Shown piece by piece: positions 1-47,557 of a DNA stretch of 64,000 nt. This stretch comes from Selaginella moellendorffii (Eukaryota; Plantae; Lycopodiophyta): positions 2,916,041 through 2,980,040 of the forward strand of contig NW_003314263.1 of the NCBI RefSeq assembly GCF_000143415.4. The letters run 5' to 3'. The first letter of the stretch is position 1. Each line of letters begins with the position of its first letter. The position numbers and the translations under genes are program-made. The notes beneath the pieces were generated by a model. The model did not search any database and was not told the DNA's origin. It was given only the letters and a program-made list of their open reading frames with translations.

Positions 1-1261
1 GGCGACTCATGGGAAATTTTTCCCTCGGGATGCAAAAGGTGTGAGGGCTTTGATCGTCCGAGGATAACGACGAAGCCATGGAAGTGAGGGCAGAAAGGGT
101 ATGTTATGCGGCTGCTATGGCATTTTTGTTTCCACTTTTTAATTTTTTTTCTCTTTTAGGTGTCTGAGGATGGCCAAGTGCTAGAAGCTGTAAGACATTT
201 CTGGTCACCAGCAAACATTGTGTGTCTGGCAAGAACACGACAGAGCTGAAGCGATGATCGATGATTCCATCAAGAGAGGCGAGATTCTTTTGTGCTAAAA
301 TGCTATTACTCTCTAGAAAACGTCTAAAACATATTCTCCTTCTACCATATTGGTAAGAGAAGTTCTTCGAAAATTCCAGCAGCAGCAACTCAAAGTGGGA
401 TTTAACATTTGAATATGGATAATATCACCGCAGTGTGGATCATTGTCTCTGCGGGGGCATCTTCTTCCATTGCCTTCTAATCCTCTTGCCGCGCCCTAAA
501 CTTTGAATCAGTGCCTTGGCGGCACACTGACGTGGCAGCAATGAATGCATCCTCTTCAGAAATCGAGCATATCCCCTTCCCTTCCCGCCTAAATTCGCCC
601 TAGTCGTGCCCAAGTATCTTTGGTATATTCTCCGCATCTTTAACTTCACGGCCAGCAGAACACCGAGGGAGAAGAAGATCTCTGCCTAGGGTTTTACAGA
701 TCGATCGATAGATTTCTAGGCGCTTGGCAGCATTGAGAAATCATCCACAAGGTACATTCTTTCTTCCCTTGCTTGGTCGCCATCGCCATAGTTCACCGGG
801 ATTGTCTAGATCTGCGGCAGAATCCAGCGTGGGATTGATCGCTCAGGCTCTCTAGGCCGGGATTTCTTGGACTGGATGCCGGATTATCACGGATTCACCT
901 CTTTTGCAATAGCATCGATGCATGAGCGCGTGGAAGCGACTGTTCCAGCGGTGCTGTTGGCGTGATCGTCGTATTGGAGAGCGTGGTTCTCATCCACCAG
1001 CTGAGAATCCGGGCAGGCAGGGTAGATCGAGCTCCCACGGCTCCAGAAAATTGGTAAGCTATCTTCTAACTTATAGATCGACGTGCATAACTCATGAAGC
1101 TCCTCTTGCAGGAAGGACGAGCTTCCACTATCTCGCCGCCAAATCCACAGCCAACTGTGACTAGTTCTAGCAGAGGAAAGCATTGGTACGTTCTTCTTTT
1201 AAACTGGGAACTGACAAGTTTCTATCCAGTTCTTAGTTCCAGACGCTAGACTTCGAATGCA

Positions 1262-4200
1262 ATGAAAGAGAGAAGAGAGAATCTGGACATTCTCAAGCCC
1301 GAGATCATTGACATGGTTGTCAAGAAGATGAAGCATAACACATATCTCTCGCTCGAGTTCTTTACGCTGGCCATGAGAATCTCCAGCTTCCGGCACGACG
1401 TGGTGATGGTCATGATCCTTGGAGTCGATGGCAACTATTTCATGGCGATCACAGACATGCCCCGTGGAAACGATCTCTACGTGAAGACGAAGTATGACAG
1501 GAAGCTGCGGCCTTCACCTCGTCCCAGACAGCAAAAAGTCCCCGAAGCAGGCTTGGATAGGTTCAGCATGGTAGCAGTCCAACACCAGCTCGGGAGGAAG
1601 ACTTACACAGCCGACGAGCAGGAAGGCAACTACGTGGATCTGATAATGAGTCACAAGCAGTACAGGCAGGAGCTCCATCTTCACAGAGGGAAGAAGCAGT
1701 GGAACGTCCGTGCAGTCAGGGACAAGTTTCTGGTCTACGAGACACTTCCTCCCGCGAGTGACACTGGTGATGATCCTCTGGTGCTTTGCGGTCGCGACAA
1801 GATCGCCATTGTTCAGCCATTGTCAGTAACAGTGAACAACCAGGCGAAGAATGTCTCGTGGAACTCGTTGGGCTTGCAGGAATGCAAAGAAGAAAGGGAG
1901 AACTATATGGTGCCGAGCAGTAAGGAGGGTCAGCCGGGTTTAGTTCCAGGCAAAGGAGCTCTAGTCTTCCACAAGACTGTGAAGAAAGGAGGAGGGAGCT
2001 GGAGCTCCAAGACGGTTGCGAAGCTGGATAACAGGCTCAAGACTGGGATAACGCACCCCTACCAGCTCTGCGTGGTTCTCAAGAAGCTCAACGATGCCTC
2101 TCTCTCCCTCAAAATCTTTACGTGGGCCAAGACAATGCAGCACGACCTGGTGATGATCATGATCCTGCACAACTATCTCATGGTGATCACAAAACTGCCC
2201 CGTGACGACGATCTCTACGTGAAGACGAAGCATGGTAGGAAGCTCGGGCCACCACCTTGTCCGAGACTAAGTCGAGAGCAGGAATTCGCAGACCACCAAG
2301 CAGGCTTCAGTGTGGCAGCACTCCACCACCAGCTCGGGAAGAAGACCTACACAGCCGAAGAGCAGGAAAGCAACTGCGTGGATCCAATCCTGAGTCACAA
2401 GGAATACGGGCGGAAGCTCCACCTTCATAGTGGGAAGGAGCAGTGGAACATCCATGCAGTCGAGGACAAGTTTCTGGACTACGAGACAGTGAGCGACACC
2501 GATGATGATCCTCCAGGGGTTTGCAGTCGCACCAAGTTCGTCAGTGGTCAGCCTTTGTCAGTAACAGTGGACAACCGGGCGACGAAGGTCTCCTCGTCAT
2601 GGAACTCGTTTCCAGTGTGGAGCTTGCGAGAAGGAACAGAAGAAACGGGGAACTATATGGTGCTGAGCAGTAAGGTGGTGCTACCAGGTTTACTCCCAGG
2701 CAAAGGAGCTCTAGTCTCCGATGCTTTGTGCGAGATTTTGAAGGAAGGAGGAGGGAGCTGGAGGTCCGAGATAGTTGAGAAGCTGGACAGGCTCAAGCGC
2801 GGGAAAACGCACCCCCACCAGGTCTGCGTTGCTCTCAAGAAGATGAAACACGATGCATCTCTCAAGCTCTTTACGTGGGCCAAGACGATCCCTGGCTCTA
2901 AGCACGACTTGGTAAACTACTGCACGATGATCATGATCTTGGGAGATGACGGCAACTATCTCATGCCGGAGGCACTCTTCATTGATCTCCAGGAGCTCGG
3001 GCTTTGCATTGACACGTTTGCAGTGAACAACATGATCCCCTGCTACACAAGAGTGAACCGGATCCAGGAAGCTGTCGACCTCTACAGAAAGATACCATAC
3101 TTTTCAGACAATTGCATCCCCGGCCTCCTCGTCGACTGGTGCAGCACTGGTCTCCAGGGAAACAATAAGGTGGCAGTTCCAGACAGCGGCACGCTAGTCT
3201 TGAATGCTTTCTATGAGGCAATGGAAGAGGGAGGAGGGAGCTGGGACTTTGAGACGGCTGAAAATCTAGACAGACTTAAGCGTGGGATCAACATGATTCT
3301 CAAGAAGATCCAGCACGATGCATCTCTTGCGCTCGAGCTCTTTATCCTGGCCAAGACGATCCCTGGTTTCCAGCATGACCTGGCCAACTACTCAACGATG
3401 ATCATGATCCTGGGAAACGCTGGTAACTATCTCACGGCCAAGGCACTCTTCACTGAGATTCAGGAGCTCGGGCTTTGCATCGACATGGTTGCAGCCAACA
3501 ACATAATCCGCTGCTACACAAGCGTGATCCAGGATGCTCTTGACCTCCAAATTGGGAAACTCTGTGGTACCATCGGGATTGCGGTTGCTGGCAAGCATGG
3601 GAGCTTCGTGGTATTTTTCGACAGTCTCGTAACGGAGATTTCATCAGATCAAATTGGCCAACTATATCTAGAAGAGAAGGACAGGGAATACCGGAAGGTG
3701 ACTGTGATTCGTGACGAGCCACAACTACAAATCGGCATTGCTGGGTCCGTAAGTGACGCTCGCTGCATCATAATGGTACTGAAGATTGAGATGTCAAGTC
3801 AGGCTCAGCATGGAGTCACCATGACTTGTGAGGCAGCTGCAAATTTCGTCTTCCAGCGCTGCGTGGCTGATGAGCACTGTACGAGATCAAGCTTTTTCAT
3901 TTTTGACAACAAGAAACTCTTCGCTGTTAAGAGAGACAACACGCGCCAGTACCAGCTCTTGCAATTGGACGCAGTGGAACAGCCGTTTTTGACTATCGGT
4001 TCTGGTGGCCCGCATGCCGAAGGTATTCTGCGAGATCCACGGCCAGGTGTGGTTGGATTTTGTTTCCTTGAGATTGGATTAAGCTGCTTTTGAATTCTGC
4101 AGGGCAAGCTCACGGGAAGAAAGCCACTCTGGGCCAAATCACTAATCTTGGGCTCGATGCCCTCGCAGAAGCATGCGACAATGATCCACATTGCGGCGGA

Positions 4201-4335
4201 GACAAATATTATGCGTATTCAAATGTTAAATCCCACTTTGATGAGCTGCTGCTGAAATTTTCGAAGAAGAACTTCTCTTACCAATATGCGAGAAGAAAGA
4301 GACCAAGAGGTAAACTAAACATGGCTTTGTTTTAG
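1262..4335 (+). CDS. Chimeric protein (~1005 aa spliced): tandem partial copies of the PPR-SMR N-terminal region fused to a proteasome-beta/HslV-like Ntn-hydrolase domain; exons 1262-4046, 4103-4335
   Basis: The 943-aa ORF repeats DLYVKTK..RKL and LKLFTWAKTIPG..HDL.NY.TMIMILG blocks that also occur in the 45046-47418 PPR protein. The C-terminus reads LCG|TIGIAVAGKHGSFVVFFDS..EYRKV..IGIAGSVSDA..TIGSGGPHAEGIL. An in-frame GT-AG intron at 4047-4102 adds ATLGQITNLGLDALAEACDNDPHCGG. Confidence 0.7.
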
Positions 4336-4360
4336 ACATTTTCTAAGGAGTAATAGCATT

Positions 4361-4831
4361 TTAGCACAAAAGAATGTGGCCTCTCTTAATGGCATCGTCG
4401 ATCATCGCCTCAGCTCTGTCGTAGTGTTCTTGCCAGACACACAATGTTTGCCAATCAACATCCGGTGACCAGAAATTTCTTACAGCTTCTAGCACTTGGC
4501 CATCCTCAGACACCTAAAAGAGAAAAAAATTAAAAAGTGGAAAACAAAAGCCATAGCATACCCTTTCCGCCCTCACGTCCATGGCTTCGTCGTTATCCTC
4601 GTCAACAATAAAGACGATCAAAGCCCTCACACCTTTTGCATCCCGAGGGAAAAATTTCCCATGAGTCGCCACACTACCTTCATATGGCACTGGCAAATCC
4701 TTTGCTGTGTAGCTCAAGAGGTAGTACTCTCGCCCACTTAGTTCATCAATCATGGCCACCTTCCCAAGTATAAAATCGCCCTTATAATTCTTGGCCATGG
4801 CTTCCATCATCTGCCTGGCAATCGCCTCCAT
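4361..4831 (-). CDS. Orphan ~140-aa two-exon gene (exons 4831-4562, 4513-4361), convergent with the Ntn-domain gene
   Basis: ORF MEAIARQMMEAM...DVRAER, then a 48-nt GT..AG intron, then VSEDGQVLEAVRNFWSPDVDWQTLCVWQEHYDRAEAMIDDAIKRGHILLC*. An upstream exon is possible (tttag acceptor just before the ATG). Confidence 0.5.
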
Positions 4832-5439
4832 CGCGACCTCGACCTAAAACAATGCCTGGACAGCAATCCTTTATTTGGAGGGCTGCATCCAAAAGTGACT
4901 TACTCCCGGAATATTCTACAGCAGTCCTTTATTTGGAGGGTACTTTGAGCTGAGATGCTGCATCTTCATTAAAATAAAATCATCAAAACAGCTTATTATA
5001 ATCCGTTGGTCTCATGTTTTCTTGGTGGGTGTTGCAAGACCAACAGTTAATGAATGAATGAAAACAGTGCTGGCTATGTTTCAGAATTTGTCCAACATTG
5101 AATCCGGTTTTCAAGAAGCTCAAATAAGCCACCAACTCACACTTTCGGTGTCTTTGCCTACGTTCCAGCGCCTGGATACAAGGGCATAGGAGTGGACTTT
5201 AACTCCGCCCGAGTTTAAGGTACACACTCTCCGCTTGTTTGCCAAAAGAAGTGTCAATGCATAGTATTGCTTAAGTCCCATCAGAGACCAGGCCAAGAAG
5301 CAAAGCGAATCACCGTGTATTATAGCGTTGTGAGCATTGCAAGGCTCCCCGGCAGCATCTAACAAGGATTTAGCCATGCCATTTCTGTAACCTGAGAATT
5401 AAACGTCATTACAGACTTTCGGGACAATTGCGTCTCCAG

Positions 5440-5630
5440 CCTCCCATCGACTGGTGAAACGCTAGTCTTTAGGAAACAGTAAGGTGGCAGTTCCAGCAGA
5501 GGCACGCCAGTCTTAAACGCTTTTCTAAGGCGATGGAATGGGACTCCGAGACGGCTGAAGTCTGGACAGACTTAAGTGTTGGATCAACATGGTTCTCAAG
5601 AGACTCGAGCACAATGCATCTCTTGGGCTA
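5440..5630 (+). pseudogene. Degenerate PPR-SMR-derived fragment
   Basis: Similar to 3120-3330 (atcgactggtg..aaggtggcagttccag..gacagacttaag..gatcaacatg), with stops. Confidence 0.65.
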
Positions 5631-5914
5631 GTGAAGGTTTCAACTCCGTTCCCCGAGTCCAAGGTACACACTCTAAGATCTCGTTGTCTTTTCATAGCAG
5701 TTTGCAGACGAATTTCTATCCGGGACTGCAAGTTCATCGCCCTGCTTACAAGCATACAGCAAGGGAAAGCGGTGGAATCCAAGTATCTCATGTATGTCAA
5801 AGTAAGTCGCTCGAAAAGCTTATAAGAAGAGCGTAAGACTTTTTATGCATAGGTGAAAGTGTTCCCGGTGGAAGACGGTTCCAAGTAGGATACATCGATG
5901 TTGATGGTGGGGTT

Positions 5915-6460
5915 GTGACGAGGATTTGATAGCTGAGAGCAGTGGTACGATGCAAATGTCTCAATTCCAGGCTGCGATAAAGAAATCTTTTTTCGCTTTC
6001 ATTTATTTTTCGTGCTGCTGTGGGGATACATACGATCAGTGCAGCTTTCCAGGTCTTTCTGGTTCTGTTCTATTCGCGTAGCACGCTGCGATTTTTTTAT
6101 AATGTACCTCTTACGAGCAGCGGAGCATTCATTCCAGGTGCTAAGCTTGTGGCGGAATGTACACGAGTGAAGCCTTGCACGTCCCTTCCTTACAGGTCTC
6201 TGTCTAGTTTGGATAGAAACCTCTTTCCTTCTTTTGTTAAGTGTAGTTCTTCCATTCCATCTGAAGACCCTCTGAAGTTACATGACTACCGGCTGCTTGG
6301 AAAACCTTGATGAAGCTTATGAGCACGAAAGAGTCGCTTCACAATGCCATGGTCCTCGTAATGAGGATCGACAAAGACATCGCAATTTCGAGGTTGTGGA
6401 AACTTTATTTTTCTGGTTACTGAATTCGTTAGCGATGTGCTGGCCACAAAGTTTCCTCGC
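5915..6460 (+). pseudogene. Captured, decayed DHAD (ilvD) gene fragment with intron remnants
   Basis: cagtggtacgatgcaaatgtctcaattccaggctgcgataa and ttccattccatctgaagaccctctgaag..cacgaaagagtcgcttcacaatgccatggtc match the reverse complement of DHAD exons at ~62450-62540 and ~61710-61860. Confidence 0.85.
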
Positions 6461-7259
6461 CTTATAATAGATCACTTCGATTTATTGTGGATCTATTAAG
6501 TGAAGCATTGGTAGCTTGCCCTTCCGAGCAAACTATGTAAGCTGCACAGCTCCTGCTTGGTCTTTCAGCTCCTCGGGTGTGTTAAAATGATGGCCATGGG
6601 ATCAGCACCGACATTCATGGATTCACAGAGAAGGGGTGCTGTGGAGGCAATCAGCGCAAGAGGACTCGGAGCTGTGGTGAGATGCTGATCATGTAAATAG
6701 ATCTTCTTGCTGAGCAGTGTTGAGTGTGATTTCCTTTCCCTGGACTTTTCTTTGTTTTTCTTTAGGGAGGCCGGAGAAATCGTTTTCATCAAGACTAACC
6801 ACCTTGATTGTCTGGTTGATTATATGGAAGCGCGAACTACTCCCAGCGCATTTATGTCACAAAAGAAGGTTTTTTTTGTTTCTGCGTGACATAAAACTTT
6901 CTCTGTTTCACCAGCTTCATGTGAGAGAGATAATATCGCGCAGTACGATGGAGTTTTTTTGCATTTTTGTCGAGGTGCGTTTTGGCTTAGAGGGAGTTAC
7001 GCAAGGTTTACGCTTAACCGGTATCCTCGTCGACTGGAGTGATGGAGGGAGCATTCGTGATGGTTTTGCTGCAAAACGTTCCTTGGGGTAATCCCGACTC
7101 CAAGGTCACACTTAAGATTTCGCGTTCCCTTACGTCCATAGCAGTTTGCATATGGTCTTCTGGATCTCATTGTTCTCCGGGACTCAAGCTCATTGGCCGG
7201 CTTAGGAGAATAAAGCGGTGGAATGCAAGAATCTCACGTATGTCTCACTCGAAGCTTTC

Positions 7260-7790
7260 CTGGCACTGGCCAGCTATGTATATTCCGCCACAAGCTGGAC
7301 ATGAATGCTGCAAACTTTCAGTCGCTGCTCGTCATAAGTACGTTAAACAACAAATTCGCGCCAGGAAAGAAAAAAGAACCAAACATATCTGTGTACACTG
7401 ATCGTATGCATGCCTGTTGACAATTCCAGGTTGCGGGTAGCATTTGCAGCTAGCACGAACAAAAAAATGAAGACGATAAGAAAGAACTCACGTTGACAGT
7501 TCCTCCGTGATCGATTACCTCACCATCAACGTTGATGTATCTTCCTTGGAACACTCTTCCACCGGGAACGCTTGCACCTATATATGCATCAAAGATCAAA
7601 CAAAGCCTTTATACAGGTCTCCGTCTCTTCTCGATAGAACTTATCTTCTTTTATACATGCAGATTTTCCATTCCATCTGAAGACCCAAGAGCACTTGATG
7701 GAGTTGCTGAAGATGAAAGATACGAGAGTCGCTTGACATGCCATTGTCCTCGTAATGGTGCTGGGTAGTGGAAACTTTGATCCACTGCCA
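7260..7790. pseudogene. Second decayed DHAD fragment, partly inverted
   Basis: ctggacatgaatgctgcaaactttcagtcgctgctcgtca matches 62005-62044 directly; ttccattccatctgaagacc matches the DHAD sense strand. Confidence 0.75.
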
Positions 7791-7998
7791 ATGATGATTC
7801 CCCACCAATGTGTTGCTTGCCTTCGATTGGAACAAAGTTGGCAAGCTAAAGGTCTTCTTTGTCCCAGTCTTAACCTTTTGTGTTATTCCAGGTGGAGGAT
7901 TTTAGAAAATTGTAATACACTGGAAAAAAATTTGTCACCCAGAAATGTTAGGCAATCTTTGTATAGTGTAATGTTTGTATGATTTAAATATTGTTCAT

Positions 7999-8250
7999 TT
8001 CAATGAATGCTTTTTCCAAGTGATGATGTTGTCACTTTAGACGAATGCTCCAATTGCCATGTGCTGAAGGCTGGATGCATATATCTAGAGCCTGGAACGA
8101 GTCCAATTTGTCCCCTATTCGTCAAAAATTGTGAACCACCACCAAAATTCAAAGTCTGGATGAGCACTTTCCACTGCCAATAAATGTTGATGACAAGTCT
8201 TCCTTTGGAGGATGCCGTGAAGATTTGTTGAGGCACAGATCTGATCTTTC
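7999..8250 (+). pseudogene. Decayed Pin-II inhibitor gene fragment immediately upstream of the P450
   Basis: gtgatgatgttgtcactttagacgaatgctccaattgc..aaggctggatgcatatatctagagcctggaac..aaggatgccgtg matches 34687-35020. Confidence 0.85.
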
Positions 8251-8346
8251 TTATGTTCAGAAAGTCCACTTAGAACAACGTGGCGGAGAAAAAAACCACG
8301 CACTGCAAAATAAAGGTTGGACAATTTTTGCTTTCATAGGCTACCG

Positions 8347-9862
8347 ATGTATATCCTCTTTGTGGCGTTAATTCTCTTCTTGGTTCTCTCATGGAGTTAC
8401 AAATCTCACAAAAACGTCCCCCCAGGCCCATGGGGACTGCCTCTGATCGGCCATCTTCATTTATTGGCAGGAACACTCCCACATAAGGGATTACAATATA
8501 TCTCCAAAAAGTATGGCCCCGTTGTATTCTTGAGGCTGGGAATGATGCCCACCGTGGTTATCTCTAGCCAGGAGCTTGTCAAGGAAGTCTTTACAACACA
8601 CGACGTGAATTTTGGTTCCAGGCCATACATGGTTTTAGGCGAGCATTTCAGCTACAACTATTCGGGACTTGGGACTTGTCCATATGGGAAGCACTGGAGA
8701 GACTCTCGCAAGCTGTGTACTATAGAGCTTTTCACAGCCAAGTGCATAGATTCCTTCGCGTGGATGAGAAAGGAGGAGCTCTCTCATGCCTTGCGAGTGA
8801 TTCTCGGCGGCAGCAAGCCAGTGAAGATGAGGGCGTTACTATCCAATTTTGCTTTCAACAATATGTCCAGGATTTTGATGAGCAAGAGGTATTTTGGTGA
8901 CGACGAAGTAGACAGAGATGCTGTAGAGTTTAAGGAGATGCTGAGCTCTGTTGTTGACCTGGTGATGAATCCCTGTGTTAGCAACTTGGTGCCTTGGTAC
9001 TTGAGATGGCTAGACTGGCAGATCCCTCGCTACAAGCGAATCCATGCCAAGCAAGACAACTTCTTACAAAAGATAATTGACGAGCACAAGGAGACAACAC
9101 GGGAATGCAAGGACTTCCTTGATATCATGCTCGAGTTCTACGGAACAAATGTCCAGGGGGAAACACACATAAAGGCAAATCTTTTGGTAAGAGTTCTTCT
9201 ATACTTTGTGATTGCCATAAATTTCATTCCAGGAGATGCTTGTCGCTGGAACCGATACTTCTGCCACCACAAGCGAGTGGCTCATGGCCTCGGTGATGCA
9301 CAATCCTCGGGTTTTGATCAAGCTCCAGCAGGAGCTTGACAGAGTCGTAGGCGGCAACCGGATGGTCCAAGAATCCGACCTCCCAAAGCTCGACTATCTC
9401 CAGCTTGTCCTCAAGGAGACATTTAGGTGCTATCCTCCAGGAGTGCTACTTTTCCCACGCATGTCTACCCAGGACGTCACAGTTGCCGGCTATCACGTTC
9501 CAAAAGGGACCACTCTCCTGGTGAATGCTTGGGCCGTGCACATGGACCCGGAAGTGTGGGAGAATCCCACACAATTCCAGCCGGAGCGCTTCTTGGGGAG
9601 CTCCATCGATGTCAAAGGCCAAAACTTTGAGCTGCTCCCATTTGGAGCCGGGCGGAGAAAGTGTCCGGGAATGTCCCTGGGATTGCGAACAGTGGAGCTG
9701 CTCGTGGCAAATCTAATTCACGGCTTTGACTGGAACTTTGTACCGGGGACGACACCGTCCATGGAAGAGGTTTTCAATAGTGCTTGCTACCTCAAGACTC
9801 CACTGCAAGCCATGGCCACTCCAAGGTTACGTATGGACATCTACAAGAACATGATCATGTAA
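8347..9862 (+). CDS. Cytochrome P450, CYP71 clan (A-type), ~489 aa; exons 8347-9186, 9233-9862
   Basis: Membrane anchor followed by PPGPWGLPLIGHLHLL; I-helix AGTDTS, K-helix KETFR, PERF, heme loop PFGAGRRKCPG; single 46-nt GT-AG intron at the conserved pre-I-helix position. Confidence 0.95.
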
Positions 9863-10445
9863 ATGTAAAACGTGGATATATTTCTATTTTAAAATGTTTA
9901 CTTAGGAGCTTTTGAATATGACTACCGCATTAAAGATGATGCTCTAGGAATCAGCATAAAAGACACATTTGACAATTGAACTCCAAGCAGTTGGGATCTC
10001 TGAGTTGTGTGGTGGATTGGTCCATAAAGATTAAAGCCCATTCTTTGGTTGGCCACCTTAATTTGAATGATGCCCAAGGAGGTATTTACCATACACAGCA
10101 TAAAATTTGGTTTGAAGCAACCATTTCAACTATAATTGGGGCTTAAAACTTCTTCATATGTAAAGTACTGGAAAGACACTCGTAAGTTGTTTTCCATAGA
10201 GCCAACCAAGTGCATCAATTCATTTGTGTAGACGAGGTATATAGTATGGATAATAGAGACTGATTATTTGATATATTATGTAGCTCTTTCTTAGGCATGT
10301 TTTACATTCACCAAGTCCTATACCATGTTAATTGCTATATCTAAAATATACTTGAATATTTTGGGATAAATCTTGTATATATAATGTTTATAAATTATAA
10401 ACTTTTCTAAACACTTTTTAATTTAATAGTTGATATGTAAAAAGA

Positions 10446-10472
10446 CTAGTAAAGATCCCAGCTTTGCTGGGA
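10446..10472 (-). mobile_element. Putative canonical Helitron 3' terminus (hairpin followed by CTAG|T)
   Basis: Minus strand reads TCCCAGC-AAA-GCTGGGA tcttta CTAG T, next to AT-rich DNA; degenerate copy near 31880. Confidence 0.45.
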
Positions 10473-12510: not shown

Positions 12511-12589
12511 AGCTGTGCAGCTTACATAGTTTGCTCGGAAGGGCAAGCTACCAATGCTTCACTTAATAGATCCACAATAAATTGAAGTG

Positions 12590-14653: not shown

Positions 14654-14678
14654 AATTCTATTACTCCTTAGAAAATGT

Positions 14679-32101: not shown

Positions 32102-34199
32102 AAAGTAACATTATTCTCATTTTAACTTTTTAACTTAATATACAAAGATCCTTTAATAAAAAAAATATTTATTTTTAACACTTGCAATGTGTAAACCATG
32201 AAATTTATAACATCAATTGTAAATTTTAAGTTTAATCTAGAAATATAGTTAATTCATTTAGATTTATAATCATTTACTAAATCTAATCCACTTCTTGGTA
32301 GTTTATTAATTAACTTATTTATTTAATAAAAGGTAAATTTTTGACAATTATCAAATAAATAAAGTTAGATATTGATAGGATCATCATAGTCAAATTTTAT
32401 ATATATATATATAATTGATAAAACATCATTAATTATATTTAAAAATAAAGTTATTTATCTGTTAATTATTTAGTTAAATTTAAATATTACTTAAATAATG
32501 TTTTATATTTATGAAATTAAATTTTATAGGTATTAATAAGTTGGATAATACTAGCCTAGACACAATTGAAAATTTTATATTCTTTCCTTTTATCAGCTCA
32601 CTTTTTTTCTAATACAATTATTGCATGCATTAGGTTTTTTTTACTTTTTAAACATTTAGAAAAAGTGAATAATGAGTTTTTTTAAAATAAATAATAATTT
32701 ATTATTTAAAAATATATCTAATAATTTGACATATAAATACAGTTTATTTATGGATGAAATATGTATTTATTTATGCATCAACTTCTCTCCATTTTGAACT
32801 TGTTTTGAAGTCATTGATTCTTTATTTTCCTTGCCTTTCTCACTTCTTTATAGCCAAGTAATGTGCTCCAGATCCTCTTAGTGGTGATCCAACCTGGTTA
32901 AATGCACACTCCTCTACTAACAAGCCTCGGCCATTATAATCAGTTGTCACGTGCATGGCAGCCATGGCTCACACAATTCCTTGGAACTGTTGAAAGCATA
33001 TTGCCATTTTGGAACTGTTGGTGGTATCACTAATCCTTACAAAAGCCAATTCTCCAAGATATTATAACCAGCAAATGGATCATAGTTACCATTTCCAATG
33101 ATGTATACGGAAGCAAGGATTGGAACAACATGTAAATCATTGCAATCAGATGGTTGCAGGACATGTTCAATCCCCACAGTTTAGTTAGTGGTACAAGATA
33201 ACTCACTTAGGAATGCATAGTCTGGCTCACTTAATGGCTTTCTGGTAGTGTTCTTTACTCTTGTTGTCTCAGCAAACTTCAGTGGAAGGGCAGTCAATCA
33301 CCAAGCATGCTGGCTTCATTACCGACAAACCGGGTCCCTAGACTTTGCAAGGCCCGCAAACTCGACAAATATGTGGTCGTCACTTAGGCATGCCCTTCAT
33401 ACTCACACAGCCTACATTCCACACGCTCTTCAGACACTCAACAACTAGATGCATTAAACCACAATGCAATGGATAAAAATGGATTTCTTGTCTTTGGTCT
33501 AGTAAAGTTCAACAAGCAAAAGTAATTTTGACATTGGGAAAAGAGAGGGACTCCAAGATTAAAATCAGGACAAGGAAATCAATTTGTATATTGTGAATGC
33601 CTCCAGCTGAGCCCACAAATGTGTATATATACATATATGCTTTATTAGAAAATAATTTCATGATCATAATCAAAAGAGTTCCCTTGTTGTGCATAAGCTG
33701 TTCCAAAATCATTCAATATGTGATATTTCAATCCATATGGTATTACCCATGTTGAGGCACCGGGAATCCAAGCGCCAGAAATTTGAATCGCGGCATCACC
33801 TTGTCAAATGCAGACGTGGCACTCACATTGGTCGGAGCCCAAAAAGGATTGAATTTATAGACGGAGCTCAATTTCATGAGCACTCTCCGTTTGAACGCTC
33901 GACTTGCAAATCTAGAGCAGCTAGGCAGAATTGCGGTCGAGCTCCCAACGCAAGATCTTCCCCAATAATCCGCGATAGTTCGTGCAATCTCTTGCTCCTC
34001 CTCAATCTCGATCTGTTCTTCAAGGGCTGAGTCGGTTTCTAGCGGTGCCATAGGCCGGAGGAAGAAACCACTGGCTGTGCAGAGGCCGGAAACCTCTAAG
34101 ATCAATCGATCTAATAGCACATTGCTGTGGCAGCGCTGTGAGCTGCTAGATCTGCATTGCTCGCAGCCACGTTGAAAGAAGCGCCATGGCCGAGGCTAT

Positions 34200-34495
34200 T
34201 GTGACGTGCACGTAAAAATCCTTTGTACCCGGTCACGTGGCCCTAATTCACATCACCACAGGTGGCCCTGATTAGGACAATCATGACGTCCTCAAAATAC
34301 TGATGGAACACGGAAGTATATGATTTGATTTTGAAAAGTCACCACAGAGAGTCAGGCTAGGTGGTCCCCCGATCACTACAATCCTGACATGTAACACGCA
34401 ACTTTGAAGTCCGGAAAACGTGAGATTCTGTAGAGAGCGATCAGGATTCGGGATGCCAAGTCATCACATAGATAGGACTCTGTCTGACTATAAAT
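34200..34495 (+). promoter_or_regulatory. Pin-II promoter: G-box CACGTG (34234-34239), TGACGT motifs, TATAAAT (34489-34495)
   Basis: Motifs seen directly; the TATA box lies ~39 nt upstream of the ATG and is conserved in the second copy. Confidence 0.45.
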
Positions 34496-34527
34496 CCAAA
34501 CAGCCTGAGGTTCAGCACCACAACAAC

Positions 34528-35291
34528 ATGGCAGCTTCATTTTTGTTCCTCACTATCCTAAGCTTTCAGCTACTTCTGATATCTGCAGGTTGATCTCCAA
34601 GTTTTGATTCTTTCTTTCAGGGCTGACTTCTTGAATGCCTTGTCATGATGATTTTGCAGCCGGCAGCCATCGTCTCCAGGTTTGTAGTGATGCTGTTGTC
34701 ACTCTGGACGAATGCTCCAATTGCTGTGCGCTTAAGGCTGGATGCATATATCTAGAGCCTGGAACTGGCAGTCCAGTTTGTCTTGGTGGCACCTCTGCTT
34801 CTCGTCTTTGCCCCTTAATTTGTGAACCACCAAAAATCAAAGTCTGCCCATCCCGAGGGACTAACCAAATTCCAATTTCTGTGCTCCCACCGGATAAGGA
34901 GCCTTCGAATGGCTGTCATCTCTACAATTTAAAGACTGGTGCACCACTGCCAGTAAATGGTGATGACAAGTCCTGCTTGAAGGATGCCGTGGAGATTTGT
35001 GGAGGCACTGTCCATCCTTGGACGCCAGGCAGCTGCGCTACTTGTTGCACCATTCCTCAAGGTTGCTTGGACTTGGGGCATGGCAAATCAATATGCGTCT
35101 CAGGACCTGGTAAAGTCTGCACGCGCGAATGTGGTTTTGTTTCCTATGTCTGCCCAGGTCCAAAAAGTGTTGCGCTCGACTTCAACTCTTGCCACACTTG
35201 CAAGAAGCCACTCAGGGAAGGTTGCAAGCTCTACAACCGTCAGGGGCACCAGCTGTGCGTCAAGGAGGATGATCTACTCCAGCTTGCCTAG
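34528..35291 (+). CDS. Secreted potato type II (Pin-II, MEROPS I20-like) multidomain serine protease inhibitor; exons 34528-34588, 34660-35291
   Basis: Signal peptide MAASFLFLTILSFQLLLISA, phase-1 71-nt intron, repeats CSNCC..KAGC.Y, CPLIC..VCP, CATCC..GC, CTREC..YVCP, GCKLYNRQG..LC. Confidence 0.85.
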
Positions 35292-35721
35292 AAGATGATG
35301 CTGTATTTATATAAAATAAACAGCTCTGGGCATCGTTGTTTAAATAATGGGTACTTGAAATGTATATATATATTATATATATAAAGTTTGACAACGCAAC
35401 TTGTTGTCTTTGTAATCTTGCACTTACAAAGAAGTTCCAAACAAACTTTACCTAGGCATAATGTTTACTTTCCCAATAGTCTATGTTATAGATCTCCGCA
35501 GAACCAAATCATACATCACAATGCATTGGTGTTCAGCTCATCAGCTTCCTCTGAGTTGAAACAACATATGGCTCGCTCTTGCCTTATCACATCCATGTGC
35601 TAATTTAAGAAAATTCCTAAATACCTGAACTTAAAGAAAAAATAAACAAAAGCAAAACGTTAGATCCAACGAATCTTTGTCCTTTTTACCCTTCCATTAC
35701 TGTGCTAATTACATATTAATT

Positions 35722-38000
35722 CTAAGCATCCATAGCAACTTGCTTCTCAGTCTCTAAACAAGTTCATAGAGATAAAAGGCTCAAACGGCGAGTCTAGAGC
35801 CACCAGCGTCCTGTTCACCGCATGGGTCACCTCCTTGCTCTTGTCCGACGCGTAGCCACACACGATGATCACTCGCTCCGGCCTCTCGAATCCCCGCGCG
35901 AGCTTCCGCCTGGACACGATCAATCCACTGGTGAGCGCCACCATCGCAGTCCCGGAGCTCATATCCTGGAGCCAGATAAACCACGCTCCCTGCCAGTCCT
36001 CCCAGATCCCTCTCGGGTAGAGCTCTGTGGAGGAGACACCCTCCCACACGTAGAAGGCCTCGCGAGCGTAGCCAAAGCAGTGGAGATGGTTGACGAGAGC
36101 ATCCGCCAGCCATCGCCCCCAGCGAGGAGGCTTGTCCATCCTCAGCTTGCGAAAAAACTCCCTCGAGTAGCTCTTGAGCTCCTTGATCGCGCGGAGGCCT
36201 TGCAGGATCTCGTTCAGGAACTCGTCCACGCTGGGATGATCATCTCCTCCTCCTCCTCCTGCTGCTGCTGTTGCTGCTGGTTTCGAGGACGACTTCATCA
36301 TCTCTCTCACCGCTCTCGAGTCCGCCACCTTGACGCTGCTCGTGTAGTGACCCAGGAGGATCGTGTACGTTTGCAGCGTCGGCTCCACGCCTCTCTCCGG
36401 CATGACTTTGGTGAGGATGAACTTGGCCGGCTCCACTTCTCGGGCCTTGAGGTAGCCATCGATGAGCGCGTTGCACATCTCGATGCTTGGACCGGCCTTC
36501 GTCTTGCAGGCTTTGTTGAACCATCGCCGGGCTTGCAGCATAGCTCCGGCTCTCGCCCACGAACTTATGAGCGTGCAGTACGTGAATCGATCTGGAGCGA
36601 GGCCGGCCTTTCGTATATCACCCAGGATGTTCTGCGCATGGCCAGGGAAGCCGCTGGAACCGTAACTCAGTATCACGTTGTTGTAGACGATCAAGTTTGG
36701 CTCTAGGCCGGAGCGGAGGTAGTCCGCGTAGAGCTCTGCCGCTGCTTTCGAGTCTCGAGCCTTGGCGTACATGTGGATGAGGATGGCGTACCCAGGCTTT
36801 CATCTGGTTGGCGGCTTCCCTGGCGTTTGTGAAGTCCCGCTGCTTGCAGAAGTTGTGGATCATTGTGTTGAACGTCTGCGCGTCGGCATTGCGGGGGGAG
36901 GCTCTCAAGTCGAGGAAGATCCGTTGGAGCTCCTTCCGGGAGCCGAACTTGCCGCACCAGTCGATGAGGAGGCCGAAGGTGCAATTGTCCGGGTGACAGC
37001 CAAAGTATGGCATCTTCCTGTAGAGGTCGAGAGCTTCCTGGATCCGGTTCACTCTTGTGTAGCAGCGGATCATGTTGTTCACTGCAAACGTGTCAAGGCG
37101 AAGCCCGAGCTCCTGTATCTCAACAAAAAGTGCCTCGGCCATGAGATAGTTCCCGTCATCTCCCAAGATCATGATCATCGTCGAGTAGTTTACCAAGTCG
37201 TGCTTGAAGCCTGGGATCGTCTTGGCCCACGTAAAGAGCTTGAGCGAGAGAGATGCGTCGTGCTTGATCTTCTTGAGAACCACGCAGACCTGGTGGGGGT
37301 GCATTATCCCATGCTTGAGCCTGTCCAGCTTCTCAACCATCTCGGAGCTCCAGCTCACTCCTCCTTCCTTCACAGTCTCGTACAAGGCATCGAAGACTAG
37401 CGCTCCTCTGCCTGGAACTAAACCCGGCAGCGCCACCTTACTGCTCGGCACCATATAGTTCCCCGGCAGAGCGATCGTTCCCTCCTTGCCTTCTTTTGGC
37501 AAGCTCCACACTGGAAACGAGTTCCACGACGAGGAAACATTCGTCGCCCGGTTGTCTAGTGACAGAGGCCGACCAATGACGAACTTGTCGCGACCACAAA
37601 GCACCGGAGGATCATCACCGGTGTCGGTCGCAGGAGGAAGTGTCTCGTAGACCAGAAACTTGTCCCCGACTGCATGGACATTCCATTGCTTCTGTCCCCT
37701 GTGAAGATGGAGCTCGCACCTGTATTGCTTGTGACCCAGAATCGGACCCATGTAGGTGCCTTCCTGCTTCTTCCCGAGCTGGTGTTGGAGTGCTACCCAC
37801 TGCCCACTGATTCTATCCAAGCCTGCTTGAGGGTCTGTGTGAACAAAGCGTTCCTGCTCTCGACTTAGTCGCGGACGAGGCGGCGGCCTCAACTTCCTAC
37901 CATACTACGTCTTCACGTAGAGATCGTCGTCCCGGCACAGGTCTCTGATCGCAGCCTTCGTCCAGTAGAAGCGAGGAAGGGGCTGAAACTTGGCACCCAT
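35722..38000 (-). pseudogene. PPR-SMR pseudogene (duplicate)
   Basis: AAG>TAG nonsense change near 37905, 23-nt frameshifting deletion near 36791, and deletions in the SMR C-terminus relative to 45046-47418. Confidence 0.92.
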
Positions 38001-38140
38001 CTCTGTTGCTAGCTAGCTAAACCCCTCGCCAACAGAAAAACTTACCGAAAGCTCATCTTTTGACTAAAGAATGTTCCTTCTCTGCCAGAAAATACGAAGG
38101 TTCAGAATCCGGACATGCAACAGAAAGTACTTACAAAGAA

Positions 38141-40841
38141 TCTATAGACAAGCGTTGGCCTGTAGTCGCAAGAGCCGCGATTCAGCAGCAGCAGCAGCAG
38201 CTTGAGCCGGAGTTAAATCTCGGAAAGTATCAGGAGTAGAACCACTGTGTTTGAAGTAGCTGTGTTCTCTTTCGGTTCGTCCCAAGCTAGTAAACTGTTC
38301 ATGTCATTCGCTGATAGAGGCTGCTCTTTTTGCTTCATTGGAAGGAGGTTCGTCTTCTGCTGGTTCATTTTGTAGATGTTCTCCTCCACAGTGTTACATA
38401 TCTGGAAATGTCGTCAGTAATTGGAAAACAGAAGAAACGTACGTAACTTACAATGAATCTATGTACAAGTGTCTTAAGACGTTGGCCAATCCGGTGGACT
38501 AGATTGATAGCCTGAGCTTCTACTGCCGGAGTGAGCAAAGGCTCCACCAAAATAACGTGTTCTCTATTAAGTTCAGGCCATTGGCACCATGTTGTATGGG
38601 TAGTAACATGACTTGGATGTTCTCCTTAAATTCCAAGATGGAAGAACCCATTTGTCTGTGAAAAACACAAAACGAGCACATGAGTAAGAGTAAAACAGAT
38701 TATCGATATTACCTGAGAGGCTTTAGTCGAACCCAGCTGAGCTTGTTGCTCTTCAGTGCGTGTTTTAACAAGTCCAGCACTTCTTTCCACGTCGAGAACA
38801 CAAGAATTTTCACAAACGGATCGGGACTAAGAATTCTCCTGACGACAGCTTCAATCTTCAAAGTTGCAAAAGAATTAAAATAAAAAGACGACAAAGCCAG
38901 ATTACCTTTGTTCCGTACGACCCTGCCACGGTTATAGATTTTTCTTCGTCCTCTTCTTCTTCCTGGAGGATTTCCGCAATTTTCGAAGAAGCCGCTTCAG
39001 CATTGGCACAAGCAATATTAGATACATAAGTCTGCTGCACGTTGGACATGCAATGCGCTTGAAATCAGCACCGTTAGCTGGTGCTTTCTGGCGGTCCACA
39101 ATAAGATTCAAACCTGCGAAATAAAATGAAGATTTGCTCAGGAAACCAACAAAGTAAGACACCAAAAACTTACACTTGCCACAAAGCAAATGGCCGCATG
39201 GAAGGACCATTGCTCCAGATTCTATGCCATCGTGGCAAACTGGGCAAATTTCTCCTTCCAAACTGTTATGCCCCTCGTCCTTCTTATTCCTTAGACCCTG
39301 CAATCCGGAAATGAGAGGAGCTGCGAATAGAAGAAAACTTAAGCCTAATACCTTCAAGTATCTGAGCTGCCTCTTCACACGAGATAGATTCTCAACAGCA
39401 ACAAATTTTTCGTTGGTAAGCTCCGCGTTTCTAATTGCTATCTCGTAGCCTTCATCACCAAAAGGATTGCCGTCTGCAGCCTTGGCACCTTGCAAACATA
39501 GCCTTGTTGTCGACATGCTCAGCTCGTCCAATGCAGTTAGAACTAATTGTTGTGCTGTTGTAAAGCGTCTCGCCGCTGCATATTCGCTACGCAATGCCTG
39601 AATTGACATGGTTTGTCAAACAGACTTACAAATAAGCACAGGAGTGTTTACTTCAAGGTGGTTCGTTTCCGCTTTCATGTATGCAAGTAAAATTTTTAAA
39701 ACCATTTCCGTTTCAGAACATCTGTGCGTAACTTGTGAAAAGAAATATTTAAGCTCGAAGCAAAGAAAAACAAAAGAAAAAAGTTTAAAAAACAAAAAGA
39801 AGTTGCCTTACCGCAGCTACTGCTGCTCCTTTTCTCCTGCCTGTGTTCGTCTCAGTTTCCTTGTTTCCCTTATCCAGTGAACGTACTTGAGAAACAAAGG
39901 CGTCTTCTGCAGTAACAATGCCATCTAATTCAGCTGCTCGGGAGCATATTTCTGTTTATCCAAGATTTGCATACTGGCCACTGACGTACTTCCTTCGTAA
40001 TTCGTCGCATTGACTGATCAGCATATCATCCCTCAGAGTTCTTGGAATTTTGCTCAATGCGTCATCCTTGCAGTTTCTGAGTGACTCTTCCAAATTGTGT
40101 AAAATATGGACTTTCTGAAGCGGATCAACTTCAAAATTAGTCGCATTTTCCTCCGCGGCTGCTAGTGCTTCTCGGTCAATGGAGACAGCCATGGGGATGT
40201 TTTCCTCGATAATCGCCAGACCTGCCAGTCCGTTCAACGAATCAACAAGATCTCGTTGAGCTTCTTCTCCTTCAGTTTTAGCTTTTTCAATTAAGACCTG
40301 AAGACTCTAATACCAAGGTTCCTTACCTCCAAGACTTCATCCATCGGCCTGCAATGAGCGTGGTGATGCCTGCAACGAGCGTACTCCCGAACTCCCCACT
40401 TGAGGATGGCAACAAGCTTGTCGCAGCTTCAACAAGGGGTTCATTAACTTTGAGGTATTCATATGATTTAGAGGTCGACCAGCACCTAATGAGTACTTCT
40501 CAATAGCTTCTCTGGCTCTCTTCACGCATTGCTCGTGTTGTTGCCTATAAAAGTGGTTCTCAACACCCGAAAACTTGAGCCATGTAATTCGCTCTTCTTG
40601 AGGAGGAATATCTAGCTGGTCTATGACATCGATCTTCATAGACCGCCACATAATCTCACGGAAAAAGGAATGAGCAAAGTCAACTGCTCCCATTTTTCCT
40701 TCCTGGAGAGCAACGAGTGTTACTTACAATAAAAAGGAAAAAACACATAGTACCTCGCAAGGATGTTTTATAGCTTTGCTGCCACCAAGTATGATTGTCA
40801 AACGGCTCTGCTTGTAAGAATCTAAGCAAGCCATGCAAATC
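38141..40841 (-). pseudogene. SHPRH 3'-half pseudogene (duplicate)
   Basis: RING CPVCHD..CGHLLCGKC, QACCHPQVG and VHRIGQ are present, but there are many deletions (including ~0.6 kb) and no 5' half. Confidence 0.92.
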
Positions 40842-42030
40842 CCTCCTCCTTCCTTCACAGTCTTGTGGAAGACTAGAGCTCCTTTGCCTGGAACTAAACC
40901 CGACTGACTCTCCTTACTGCTCGGCACCGTATAGTTCTCCGTTTCTTCTTTGCATTCCCGCAAGCCCAATGAGTTCCACGAGACATTCTTTGCCCGGTTG
41001 TCCACTGTTACTGACAAGGGCCGAACAATGACGATCTTGTCATGACTGCAAAGCACCAAAGGATCATCACTGGTGTCGCTCACGTGAGGAAGTGTCTCGT
41101 AGACCAGAAACTTGTCCCTGACTGCATGGACGTTCCACTCCTTCCTGCTGTGAAGGTGGAGCTCCTGCCTGTACTGCTTGTGACTCATGATCAGATCCAC
41201 GGAGTTGCTTTCCTTCTTGTAGGCTGTTTAAGTCTTCCTCCCGAGCTGGTGTTGGACTGCTACCATGCTGAATCTATCCAAGCCTACTTGGGGGTCTTTC
41301 TGCTGTCTCGGACGATGTGGCGGCCACAGCTTCCTCGTCTTCACATAGAGATCGTTTCCACGGGGCATGTCTGTGATCACCATGAGATAGTTGCCATCGA
41401 CTCCAAGGATCATGACCATCACCACGTCGTGCCGGAAGCTGGAGATTCTCATGGCCAGCGTAAAGAAATCGAGCGAGAGATATGTGTCATGCTTCATCTT
41501 CTTGACAACCATGTCAACGATCTTGGGCTTAAGACTGTCCAGATTCTCTCTTCTCTCTTTCATTGCATCGAAGTCTAGCGTCTGGAACTAAGAACTGGAT
41601 AGAAACTTGTCAGTTCCCAGTTTAAAAGAAGAACGTATTGGAGGGCTGTGGATTCGGCGGCGAGATAGTGGAAGCTCGGCTTGTTCCTTCCTGCAAGAGG
41701 AGCTTCATGAGTTTTGCAAGTCGATTGATAAGTTAGAAGATATCTTACCAATTTGCTGGAGCTGTGGGAGCTCGATCTGCCCTGCCTCCCCAGATTCTCA
41801 GCTGTGGATGAGAACGAAGCCCTCCAATACGACGATCATGCAGACGGCACCGCTGGAACATTTGCTTCCACGCACTCATGCATCAATGGTATTGCAAGAG
41901 AGGTGAAGCCATCCAGTCCAAGAAATCCCGGGCTAAAGAGCCTGAGCAATCAATCCCGCACTGGATTCTACCGCAGATATGGACAATCACGGCGAGCTGT
42001 CGCAATGGGGACCTAGAAAGGGAAGAAAGA
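40841..42030 (-). pseudogene. Fourth copy of the chimera 5' flank and PPR-derived N-terminus (ATG 41563), fused to the SHPRH remnant
   Basis: MKERRENLDSLKPKIVDMVVKKMKH... matches the 1262 ORF; TAC>TAA stop at 41228; ORF 40724..41200 runs into SHPRH-derived sequence. Confidence 0.85.
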
Positions 42031-47418: not shown

Positions 47419-47557
47419 CTCTGTTGCTAGCTAGCTAAACCCCGAAAAACTTACCTTTATGAGAAAGCTCATCTTTCGATTAAAGAATGTTCCTTCTCTG
47501 CTAGAAAATACAAAGGTTCAGAATCCGGACATGCAAGAGAAAGTACTTACAAAGAAT

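What the first reader, a model, noticed from the sequence alone, without database searches (positions are those of the whole stretch)
1..42030. Local gene-fragment recycling zone: donors of most captured pieces lie in the same window
The left 42 kb holds at least six DHAD fragments, several PPR-SMR fragments, two Pin-II fragments, a SHPRH half and a P450 fragment. Intact donors for all of these are within the window (60296-62978, 45046-47418, 43856-44616, 47558-52868, 8347-9862). DHAD pieces keep intron remnants, so copying was DNA-based, not retroposition. A rolling-circle element sits in the middle. Established: Helitrons capture gene fragments. Inference: proximity-biased capture or template switching has repeatedly shuffled neighbouring exons into new chimeras.
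Basis: partly seen in the sequence, partly recalled or inferred. Interest (0 to 1): 0.75.

Follow-up and report, generated by a model that had tools for sequence, protein, structure and literature searches.

The report
Nested local duplications, not Helitron capture
In this 64-kb stretch of the spikemoss Selaginella moellendorffii, about 25 gene pieces come from only a few old copies of neighbouring genes, later multiplied by ordinary large local duplications; a decayed Helitron among them shows no sign of having moved any of them.

Summary
The left 42 kb carries six DHAD pieces, about 13 PPR pieces, two Pin-II pieces plus a whole Pin-II copy, an SHPRH 3' half and a P450 remnant. Apparently intact source genes lie in the same window. 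The DHAD pieces keep intron remnants. A degraded Helitron gene sits at 19.2-23.8 kb, and the assembly gap lies inside it.

Copies share the same deletions and junctions, so they trace to about 3-5 founding copies (DHAD, PPR, Pin-II; K 0.10-0.37). At least six block duplications then multiplied them:
- a 5-kb direct duplication (K 0.085);
- an 8.2-kb tandem duplication of Pin-II, PPR and half of SHPRH (K 0.03-0.04);
- an inverted duplication of at least 6.5 kb around the P450 gene (K 0.02), present in both haplotypes;
- three smaller partial copies (K 0.07-0.09).

The SHPRH half and the P450 piece are a truncated end and a deletion remnant of such blocks. No block edge has a Helitron terminus. 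All annotated relatives lie on this scaffold or its allelic partner. One piece, a proteasome-like domain, has no source in the window.

The locus is a new example of a known kind of duplication cluster. No genome-wide DNA search was possible. Other notes of this scan already cover the chimeric gene, the proteasome-like domain and the Pin-II pair.

The parts
1..6552 (+). Left arm of the large inverted duplication. It runs off the window's left end and carries the extra 1531-3341.
   Evidence: 1-1530 matches rc 15675-17255 (98.0% of aligned bases, K2P 0.020). 3342-6552 matches rc 12510-15672 (97.9%, K 0.021)..
12510..17338 (-). Right arm of the inverted duplication. It is the derived copy and has a private 1.8-kb deletion at 15672|15675.
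   Evidence: At the inner edge the left arm continues like copy C, while the right arm breaks there. The deletion junction has a 2-3 nt filler. The other haplotype's allele, P0007, is full length.
749..4335 (+). Chimeric gene C1 (ORF 1262-4093, 943 aa): about 3.5 tandem units of the PPR 5' part fused to a proteasome-like domain (exons 3566-4048 and 4102-4332).
   Evidence: Pfam. tblastn to the PPR gene. 100% identical over 921 aa to SELMODRAFT_404512. Distant proteasome-family relatives.
14688..16457 (-). Chimera copy C2 (ORF 14921-15943, 340 aa), which has the internal deletion.
   Evidence: P0008 matches it at 100%.
11362..12483 (+). Older, deleted chimera copy C3, flanked by a 123-nt inverted repeat (10926-11048 / 12361-12483, 99.2%).
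   Evidence: K 0.074 for the 3' part, 0.29 for the 5' part.
40840..42039 (-). Chimera 5' copy C4, joined directly to the truncated SHPRH copy.
   Evidence: Matches rc 749-1997 (91.5%, K 0.090). Junction alignment. In-frame stop seen.
4156..4777 (+). Repeat X: the last exon of the proteasome-like gene plus downstream DNA. Other copies: 1-461(-), 14237-14858(-), 16745-17338(+), and partial copies at 10673-10842 and 19049-19325.
   Evidence: Homology continues beyond X, so X is not a terminal inverted repeat of a transposon.
5940..6418 (+). DHAD piece p1, covering gene 62495->61636 (end of exon 1 to the start of intron 4). Sister copies: 12644-13123(-), 28914-29414(+) and the older 18159-18428(-).
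   Evidence: All copies share the same deletions, including the loss of intron 1 plus most of exon 2a and a 21-nt exon-3 deletion.
7254..7765 (.). DHAD piece p2 (gene about 62308->61704), rearranged. Sister copy at 30303-30658.
5622..10671 (+). Source of direct duplication SD-C: DHAD p1, DHAD p2, the Pin-II piece, the P450 gene and an AT-rich tail.
   Evidence: K 0.085.
28605..32102 (+). Copy of SD-C. The P450 body (8745-about 10248) is deleted, which leaves the 'P450 fragment' at 31264-31704.
8014..8240 (+). Pin-II 5' piece (codons about 18-78) lying 170 nt upstream of the P450 start. Sister copy at 30981-31285.
   Evidence: tblastn E 1e-9 to 1e-10. K 0.10-0.155 to the two Pin-II genes.
8317..9862 (+). 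Cytochrome P450 gene, in the spacer of the inverted duplication.
   Evidence: Pfam p450 profile positions 1-255 and 270-449.
19170..23800 (-). Degraded Helitron RepHel gene. The assembly gap at 22354-22808 lies inside it.
   Evidence: DUF6570, Helitron_like_N, PIF1 and Pif1_2B found in order across at least 10 frame breaks. GC 0.255 and CpG o/e 0.17. Unique in the window.
33435..40841 (+). Copy of tandem duplication SD-A. It holds an intact Pin-II (34635-35291), a PPR pseudogene (35747-38012, minus strand) and the SHPRH 3' half (38084-40841, minus strand).
   Evidence: Collinear with 42708-50938 at 96-97% of aligned bases, K 0.03-0.04. PPR defects listed.
42708..50938 (+). Source segment of SD-A: Pin-II 43963-44616(+), PPR 45046-47418(-) and the 3' part of SHPRH. 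The SHPRH gene runs on to 52868.
   Evidence: The break at 50938 lies inside the SNF2 domain.
60300..62978 (-). DHAD gene, apparently intact. Source of the DHAD pieces.
   Evidence: Exon-by-exon matches to Arabidopsis DHAD residues 19-359, 378-422 and 444-about 560, all in order.

Best explanation
The left 42 kb is a cluster of nested local segmental duplications in Selaginella moellendorffii. It is not transposon cargo.

Founding events (inferred, 3-5 of them):
- The 5' part of the PPR gene was copied next to a proteasome-like gene, tripled in tandem, and became a chimeric gene.
- An 860-bp internal DHAD segment was copied at the DNA level.
- A 160-bp Pin-II 5' piece landed upstream of the P450 gene.

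Block duplications (shown): DNA blocks carrying these pieces were then copied locally at least six times, in both orientations.
- SD-C: a 5-kb direct copy placed 23 kb away, followed by a deletion that removed the P450 body from the copy.
- Partial chimera copies C3 and C4, and the repeat copy U3.
- SD-A: an 8.2-kb tandem copy of Pin-II, PPR and half of SHPRH.
- An inverted duplication of at least 6.5 kb around the P450 gene.
- A 1.8-kb deletion private to this haplotype.

Mechanism (inferred): repair- or replication-based duplication, either end joining or template switching. Junctions show a 2-nt microhomology or a short filler, and there are small inverted patches.

The Helitron is an old, methylation-decayed insertion. 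I found nothing that connects it with the duplications.
For: - Large collinear blocks include intergenic DNA and several genes in their original order.
- Divergence is layered: K 0.02, 0.03-0.04, 0.07-0.09, then 0.10-0.37 for pieces against their source genes; dS is 0.28-0.56 for PPR units against the gene.
- Copies share derived deletions and junctions.
- The P450 piece is a deletion remnant. The SHPRH half is the truncated end of SD-A.
- No hairpin-CTRR terminus lies within 130 nt of any of 43 block edges. The one good candidate, at 10446(-), sits inside continuous homology.
- X has no unrelated flanks, so it is not a transposon's terminal repeat.
- The RepHel is unique in the window, frame-broken and CpG-depleted.
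- Both haplotypes encode two chimeras: P0006 and P0008 on this scaffold, P0001 and P0007 on the allelic one. The inverted duplication is therefore real.
- All annotated relatives found lie on these two scaffolds.
Against: - Copies without a gene model elsewhere would have gone unseen.
- Three unrelated neighbouring genes each gave a short internal piece to one mosaic. Plain tandem duplication does not explain this without many later deletions, and no other remnant of 50.9-60.2 kb is present.
- C1, C3 and C4 begin within about 10 nt of the same point, 749-758. This could mark a discrete mobile unit.
- The founding junctions are too old to read.
- The left-hand copies are local to the right-hand source genes only if the scaffold join across the gap is correct.
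Confidence: 0.7

Rival explanations
1. One reading: a standing process of proximity-biased capture or template switching took pieces from neighbouring genes many separate times, so that most of the roughly 25 pieces are independent events.
For: - The pieces come from at least three different neighbours, in both orientations.
- There are small recent inverted patches: 7301-7606 against rc 30215-30521 has K 0.040 inside flanks at 0.085, and the 123-nt repeat 10926-11048 / 12361-12483 is 99.2% identical.
- The 40840 junction shows a short microhomology.
Against: - DHAD copies share the same deletions.
- PPR pieces share the same start points, 47359/47361, and the same joins across C1-C4.
- The pieces travel inside long collinear blocks.
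Confidence: 0.15
2. Transposon cargo: the mosaic (chimera, X and DHAD pieces) or SD-A is the cargo of a non-autonomous Helitron or another gene-capturing element that transposed locally. Other follow-ups of this scan reported such cargo elsewhere in this genome.
For: - A RepHel lies in the middle of the region.
- Earlier notes report Helitron cargo in this genome.
- The chimera copies share a 5' edge, beginning 'TCTTTC'.
- Inverted X copies flank each chimera.
- A hairpin-CTAG end exists at 10446(-).
Against: - No Helitron terminus lies at any block edge.
- Homology runs through the 10446 candidate.
- The flanks of X are themselves homologous, so there is no TIR/TSD structure.
- X contains the chimera's own last coding exon.
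- The source genes are adjacent rather than unlinked.
- Annotated copies lie on one scaffold pair only.
Confidence: 0.1
3. Assembly artefact: some duplications are the two haplotypes of this heterozygous assembly placed side by side, or the scaffold is wrongly joined at the gap.
For: - The arms of the inverted duplication differ by only 2%.
- A gap lies between the left-hand copies and the source genes.
- The assembly holds both haplotypes, as the 99%-identical allelic models on another scaffold show.
Against: - The allelic scaffold also encodes two distinct chimeras, each closest to one arm.
- The arms differ by a 1.8-kb indel and enclose a unique P450 gene.
- SD-A copies differ by 3-4% and 40 indels, and the PPR copy carries pseudogene lesions. 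That is more than the roughly 1% allelic difference.
- The gap flanks are collinear parts of one RepHel.
Confidence: 0.05

Closest known systems
Mosaic segmental-duplication clusters ('duplication shadowing', complex tandem and inverted duplicons), best described in primates and Drosophila (named from my own knowledge)
   Same: Blocks longer than 1 kb and at least 90% identical are nested inside one another. New copies land next to older ones. Truncated genes sit at block ends, pseudogenes accumulate, and chimeric genes form at the junctions.
   Different: The scale is small (3-8 kb blocks within about 50 kb) in a compact lycophyte genome. The oldest layer is made of short internal gene pieces rather than whole-gene copies.
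Helitron gene capture (maize type)
   Same: Multi-gene mosaics of intron-bearing fragments are copied as DNA, and a RepHel gene is present in the region.
   Different: No block has Helitron termini. The source genes are immediate neighbours, not unlinked genes. No dispersed copies were seen. The RepHel is decayed and shares no sequence with the blocks.
FoSTeS/MMBIR complex rearrangements (replication template switching)
   Same: Short templated copies from nearby DNA occur in both orientations, with 2-nt microhomology or a short filler at the readable junctions and small inverted patches inside duplicates.
   Different: Only two young junctions could be read. The old ones are eroded. The events are layered over a long time rather than arising in one event.
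Pack-MULE / TIR-bounded gene-fragment carriers (rice type)
   Same: Each chimera copy is flanked by inverted repeats (X) of up to 600 bp.
   Different: X is the chimera's own 3' exon plus downstream DNA. Homology continues outside X. No target-site duplication or transposase was found.

Membership tests
Helitron-borne captured fragments | A rolling-circle Rep/helicase gene of the family is present | tested here: met
   DUF6570, Helitron_like_N, PIF1 and Pif1_2B lie in order on the minus strand, 23800-19170, but with at least 10 frame breaks.
Helitron-borne captured fragments | Fragment-bearing unit bounded by 5'-TC and a 3' hairpin plus CTRR, inserted at A|T | tested here: not met
   The scan for hairpin-CTRR found 17 sites, none within 130 nt of 43 block edges. 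The best site, 10446(-), lies inside continuous homology between the SD-C copies.
Helitron-borne captured fragments | The same cargo is found at unlinked genomic sites | tested here: inconclusive
   Only protein databases could be used. All relatives (P0001-3, P0006-10) lie on the 4.46-Mb scaffold or the allelic 1.63-Mb scaffold. No genome DNA search was available.
Segmental duplication | Non-transposon blocks of at least 1 kb and at least 90% identity | tested here: met
   SD-A is 7.4 kb at 96%. The inverted arms are 1.5 + 3.2 kb at 98%. SD-C is 1.6 + 1.1 kb at 92%.
Segmental duplication | Collinear copy of several genes plus intergenic DNA | tested here: met
   33435-40841 follows 42708-50938 through Pin-II, PPR and SHPRH and the spacers between them.
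Segmental duplication | Real in the organism, not an assembly artefact | tested here: inconclusive
   The inverted duplication is supported by two distinct chimera alleles on the other haplotype's scaffold. SD-A and SD-C could not be checked without reads.
Retroposed gene copies | Introns are absent from the copies | tested here: not met
   Remnants of DHAD introns 2, 3 and 4 align in the pieces.
Pack-MULE-like TIR element | Terminal inverted repeats with unrelated flanks and a target-site duplication | tested here: not met
   The sequence beyond the outer ends of X2 and X4 is homologous (4860-4926 matches 17339-17405 at 97%) and shows no target-site duplication.
Replication template switching (FoSTeS/MMBIR) | Microhomology or templated insertions at breakpoints | tested here: inconclusive
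   The 40840 junction has about 2 nt of shared bases. The 15672|15675 deletion has a 2-3 nt filler. The older junctions are unreadable.

The most novel reading that the evidence does not exclude
This neighbourhood may be a long-lived hotspot of replication template switching that copies short pieces of adjacent genes. It may have built a new, selected protein-coding gene: tandem PPR N-terminal units fused to a rare proteasome-like Ntn-hydrolase domain. That gene has stayed open over 943 codons despite dS of 0.3-0.5 among its parts, and it is kept in two copies on both haplotypes.
Probability: 0.25. Interest if true: 0.55.

Novelty: new member of a known kind. Interest (0 to 1): 0.3.

Why it matters
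- It shows how one count of "many captured gene fragments" can shrink to a few founding events once shared deletions and block structure are checked.
- It warns against crediting a nearby Helitron with fragment shuffling, in a genome where Helitron cargo has been reported at other loci.
- Such clusters inflate gene families and create fusion gene models in the S. moellendorffii annotation. Examples are SELMODRAFT_404554 (chimera 5' + SHPRH half + PPR) and 404507.
- The cluster is also the birthplace of a chimeric gene that looks constrained. That gene is the most interesting by-product of the locus.

Tried and rejected
No DNA outside the window could be compared.
- The search of earlier findings by sequence (X element) and by words (DHAD, PPR) returned nothing.
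- Literature searches gave nothing specific to this locus or to Helitron capture in Selaginella. The Selaginella genome paper could not be retrieved under the PMC id I tried.
- The ESM Atlas gave no usable hit for the proteasome-like part.
- Pfam scans of 30 further ORFs in the unexplained stretches (1-1.3, 4.5-7.4, 10.6-11.6, 17.3-18.2, 24-28.6, 33.6-34.2 kb; 53-58 kb) found nothing except an ADF/cofilin gene. No transposase, reverse transcriptase or integrase turned up.
- I tested whether the AT-rich tail after 32102 continues into the RepHel element. Only low-complexity matches appeared.
- I tested whether the left side holds remnants of 50.9-60.2 kb or 63-64 kb, as an old whole-region copy would leave. 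There are none.
- X as a transposon terminal repeat was rejected.
- Spliced genes (DHAD, SHPRH, P450) were searched exon by exon, by reference only.
Full report
**Organism and place**

The 943-aa ORF at 1262-4093 is 100% identical over 921 residues to SELMODRAFT_404512 (P0006). That protein is encoded on a 4.46-Mb scaffold of Selaginella moellendorffii. Two models on a 1.63-Mb scaffold, P0001 and P0007, are 99-100% identical to the window's two chimera copies. I read them as the other haplotype.

**The gap, tested first**

The gap at 22354-22808 lies inside an AT-rich minus-strand Helitron gene. DUF6570 lies at 22885-23220. On the other side, Helitron_like_N starts at profile position 87 (21807-22286). 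PIF1 follows at 20118-20465 and 19879-20133, and Pif1_2B at 19332-19781.

The order and strand are those of a single RepHel. The missing domain parts, about 405 nt, fit the 586 nt between the flanking ORFs. Continuity is therefore plausible. The reading frame cannot be known.

No duplicated block touches the gap. However, the PPR, Pin-II, SHPRH and DHAD source genes all lie to its right, and the chimeras C1-C3 lie to its left. Their closeness to each other therefore depends on the scaffold join being correct.

**The observation**

Self-blastn shows that 70% of 1-42030 has a match elsewhere in the window. The DHAD, P450, Pin-II, PPR and SHPRH genes look intact when searched exon by exon. I built no joined spliced model.

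The DHAD pieces align through introns 2, 3 and 4, so they were copied as DNA.

There are two corrections. No SMR domain was detected in the PPR gene. The chimera's proteasome-like domain (3566-4048 and 4102-4332) has no source in the window. It has only eight relatives among 1.84 billion proteins.

**Anatomy**

Four large relations explain most of the similarity.

- **SD-A.** 33435-40841 is a collinear direct copy of 42708-50938 (96-97% of aligned bases, K2P 0.03-0.04).
  - It carries a whole Pin-II gene.
  - It carries a PPR copy that is now a pseudogene, with a stop at codon 35, 23-nt and 8-nt deletions and a 1-nt insertion.
  - It carries the SHPRH 3' half, cut inside the SNF2 domain.
- **Inverted duplication.** 1-1530 and 3342-6552 match rc 15675-17255 and rc 12510-15672 (98%, K 0.02). 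The arms surround the P450 gene.
  - At the inner edge the left arm continues like the older copy C, so the right arm is the derived one.
  - The right arm lacks 1531-3341, with a 2-3 nt filler at the join.
  - The other haplotype's allele (P0007, 920 aa) is full length, so this deletion is recent and private to this haplotype.
- **SD-C.** 5622-8744 plus 10310-10671 matches 28605-31703 plus 31730-32102 (92%, K 0.085).
  - The copy lost the P450 body. The 'P450 fragment' is what remains.
- **Partial chimera copies.** C3 lies at 11362-12483. C4 is rc 40840-42039 (K 0.09) and is joined to the SHPRH stump with about 2 nt of shared bases.

A repeat, X, is present six times. It consists of the last exon of the proteasome-like gene plus downstream DNA.

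**Few founding events**

- The p1-type DHAD pieces (5940-6418, 12644-13123, 28914-29414) and the older 18159-18428 share the same loss of intron 1 plus most of exon 2a. The three p1 copies also share further deletions in exons 3 and 4.
- The p2 pieces keep more of exon 2a. DHAD therefore contributed one or two founding copies.
- The PPR units in the chimera all start at gene position 47359/47361. C1 to C4 share the same internal joins and a common 5' edge within about 10 nt.
- The Pin-II piece and the P450 remnant travel together inside SD-C.
- About 25 pieces thus reduce to 3-5 founding copies plus at least six block duplications.
- The founding copies are old: K 0.10-0.37, and dS 0.28-0.56 for the PPR units. 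The blocks are younger.

**The Helitron**

The RepHel is unique in the window and broken in at least 10 places. It has GC 0.255 and CpG o/e 0.17, against 0.73-0.99 for the rest of the window apart from two other AT-rich stretches. This points to an old, silenced insertion.

A scan for hairpin-CTRR ends found none within 130 nt of 43 block edges. The single good candidate, at 10446(-), lies inside continuous homology between the SD-C copies. The AT-rich tail after 32102 does not match the RepHel element. X is not a transposon terminal repeat, because homology continues beyond it.

**Local or dispersed**

Every annotated relative lies on the window's scaffold or on the allelic scaffold. P0002 (chimera 5' + SHPRH half + PPR) and P0003 are 87-100% identical to the window's copies in ungapped segments. 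They are not encoded in the window, so more copies lie nearby on the same scaffold.

This fits local amplification.

**Mechanism**

- Shown: layered local block duplications, deletions and small inversions.
- Inferred: end joining or replication template switching, both for the block duplications and for the founding joins.
- Small inverted patches hint at template switching or gene conversion between copies. Examples are 7301-7606 against rc 30215-30521 (K 0.040 inside flanks at 0.085) and the 99.2% inverted repeat of 123 nt around C3.
- Nothing remains in the left 42 kb of 50.9-60.2 kb. The short DHAD, PPR and Pin-II pieces are therefore not simply the debris of one old whole-region copy.

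**Verdict**

Local origin is supported. Helitron capture and many independent captures are not. The locus is a new example of a known kind of duplication cluster, of modest interest. Its most interesting product is the chimeric gene, which is still open and has dN/dS of 0.5-0.6 between its own repeats. Other notes of this scan already cover that gene.

Noticed in passing
window 1262-4093 (+); copy at 14921-15943 (-): The chimeric ORF stays open over 943 codons, although its internal PPR-derived units differ by dS 0.38. dN/dS is 0.59 between units and 0.3-0.6 against the PPR gene. This suggests constraint on a young chimeric gene (SELMODRAFT_404512).
   Followed up: partly
window 3566-4048 and 4102-4332 (+): The proteasome-like domain has only 8 relatives (E <= 0.001) among 1.84 billion representative proteins. 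Three of these are local Selaginella copies (P0008-P0010). Of the four distant hits scanned with Pfam, three pass the Proteasome gathering score and one falls just below it.
   Followed up: partly
window 43963-44616 vs 34635-35291 (+): The two Pin-II genes differ by 31 nonsynonymous and 6 synonymous changes (dN/dS 1.58, dS 0.041). This points to relaxed or positive selection, but the excess was not tested for significance.
   Followed up: partly
window 7301-7606 vs 30215-30521: A 306-nt DHAD-derived segment is inverted between the two SD-C copies. It is about half as divergent (K 0.040) as its flanks (0.085). The neighbouring 49-nt and 39-nt segments are rearranged in a way that a single inversion cannot produce.
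   Followed up: partly
window 10926-11048 and 12361-12483: A 123-nt inverted repeat at 99.2% identity brackets the old chimera copy C3. It is far younger than what it encloses.
   Followed up: no
window 19326-23800: The Helitron gene has GC 0.255 and CpG o/e 0.17 in a region that is otherwise about 0.45-0.48 GC. The stretch 24.2-28.6 kb is also CpG-depleted (0.41) and has no recognisable domain.
   Followed up: partly
window 24215-24710: Two 155-nt direct repeats (96% identical) flank a perfect 14-bp-stem hairpin at about 24375-24413, just upstream of the RepHel start.
   Followed up: no
window 10419-10446 (-): A Helitron-like 3' end (7-bp GC-rich hairpin, 6 nt, then CTAG|T) lies in an AT-rich tail downstream of the P450 gene. 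Its decayed copy lies near 31866.
   Followed up: partly
window 60098-60182 (-): A tRNA gene lies just downstream of DHAD (Rfam 59.7 bits). ARAGORN could not assign its anticodon.
   Followed up: no
window 57822-58271 (-) and 58941-59984 (-): An ADF/cofilin gene and an IBR/RING (RBR-type) E3 ligase gene lie between SHPRH and DHAD. Neither has any copy in the left 42 kb.
   Followed up: partly
window 10076-10237 (+): A small extra P450-like piece (42% identity to P450 codons 90-152) lies just downstream of the P450 gene.
   Followed up: no
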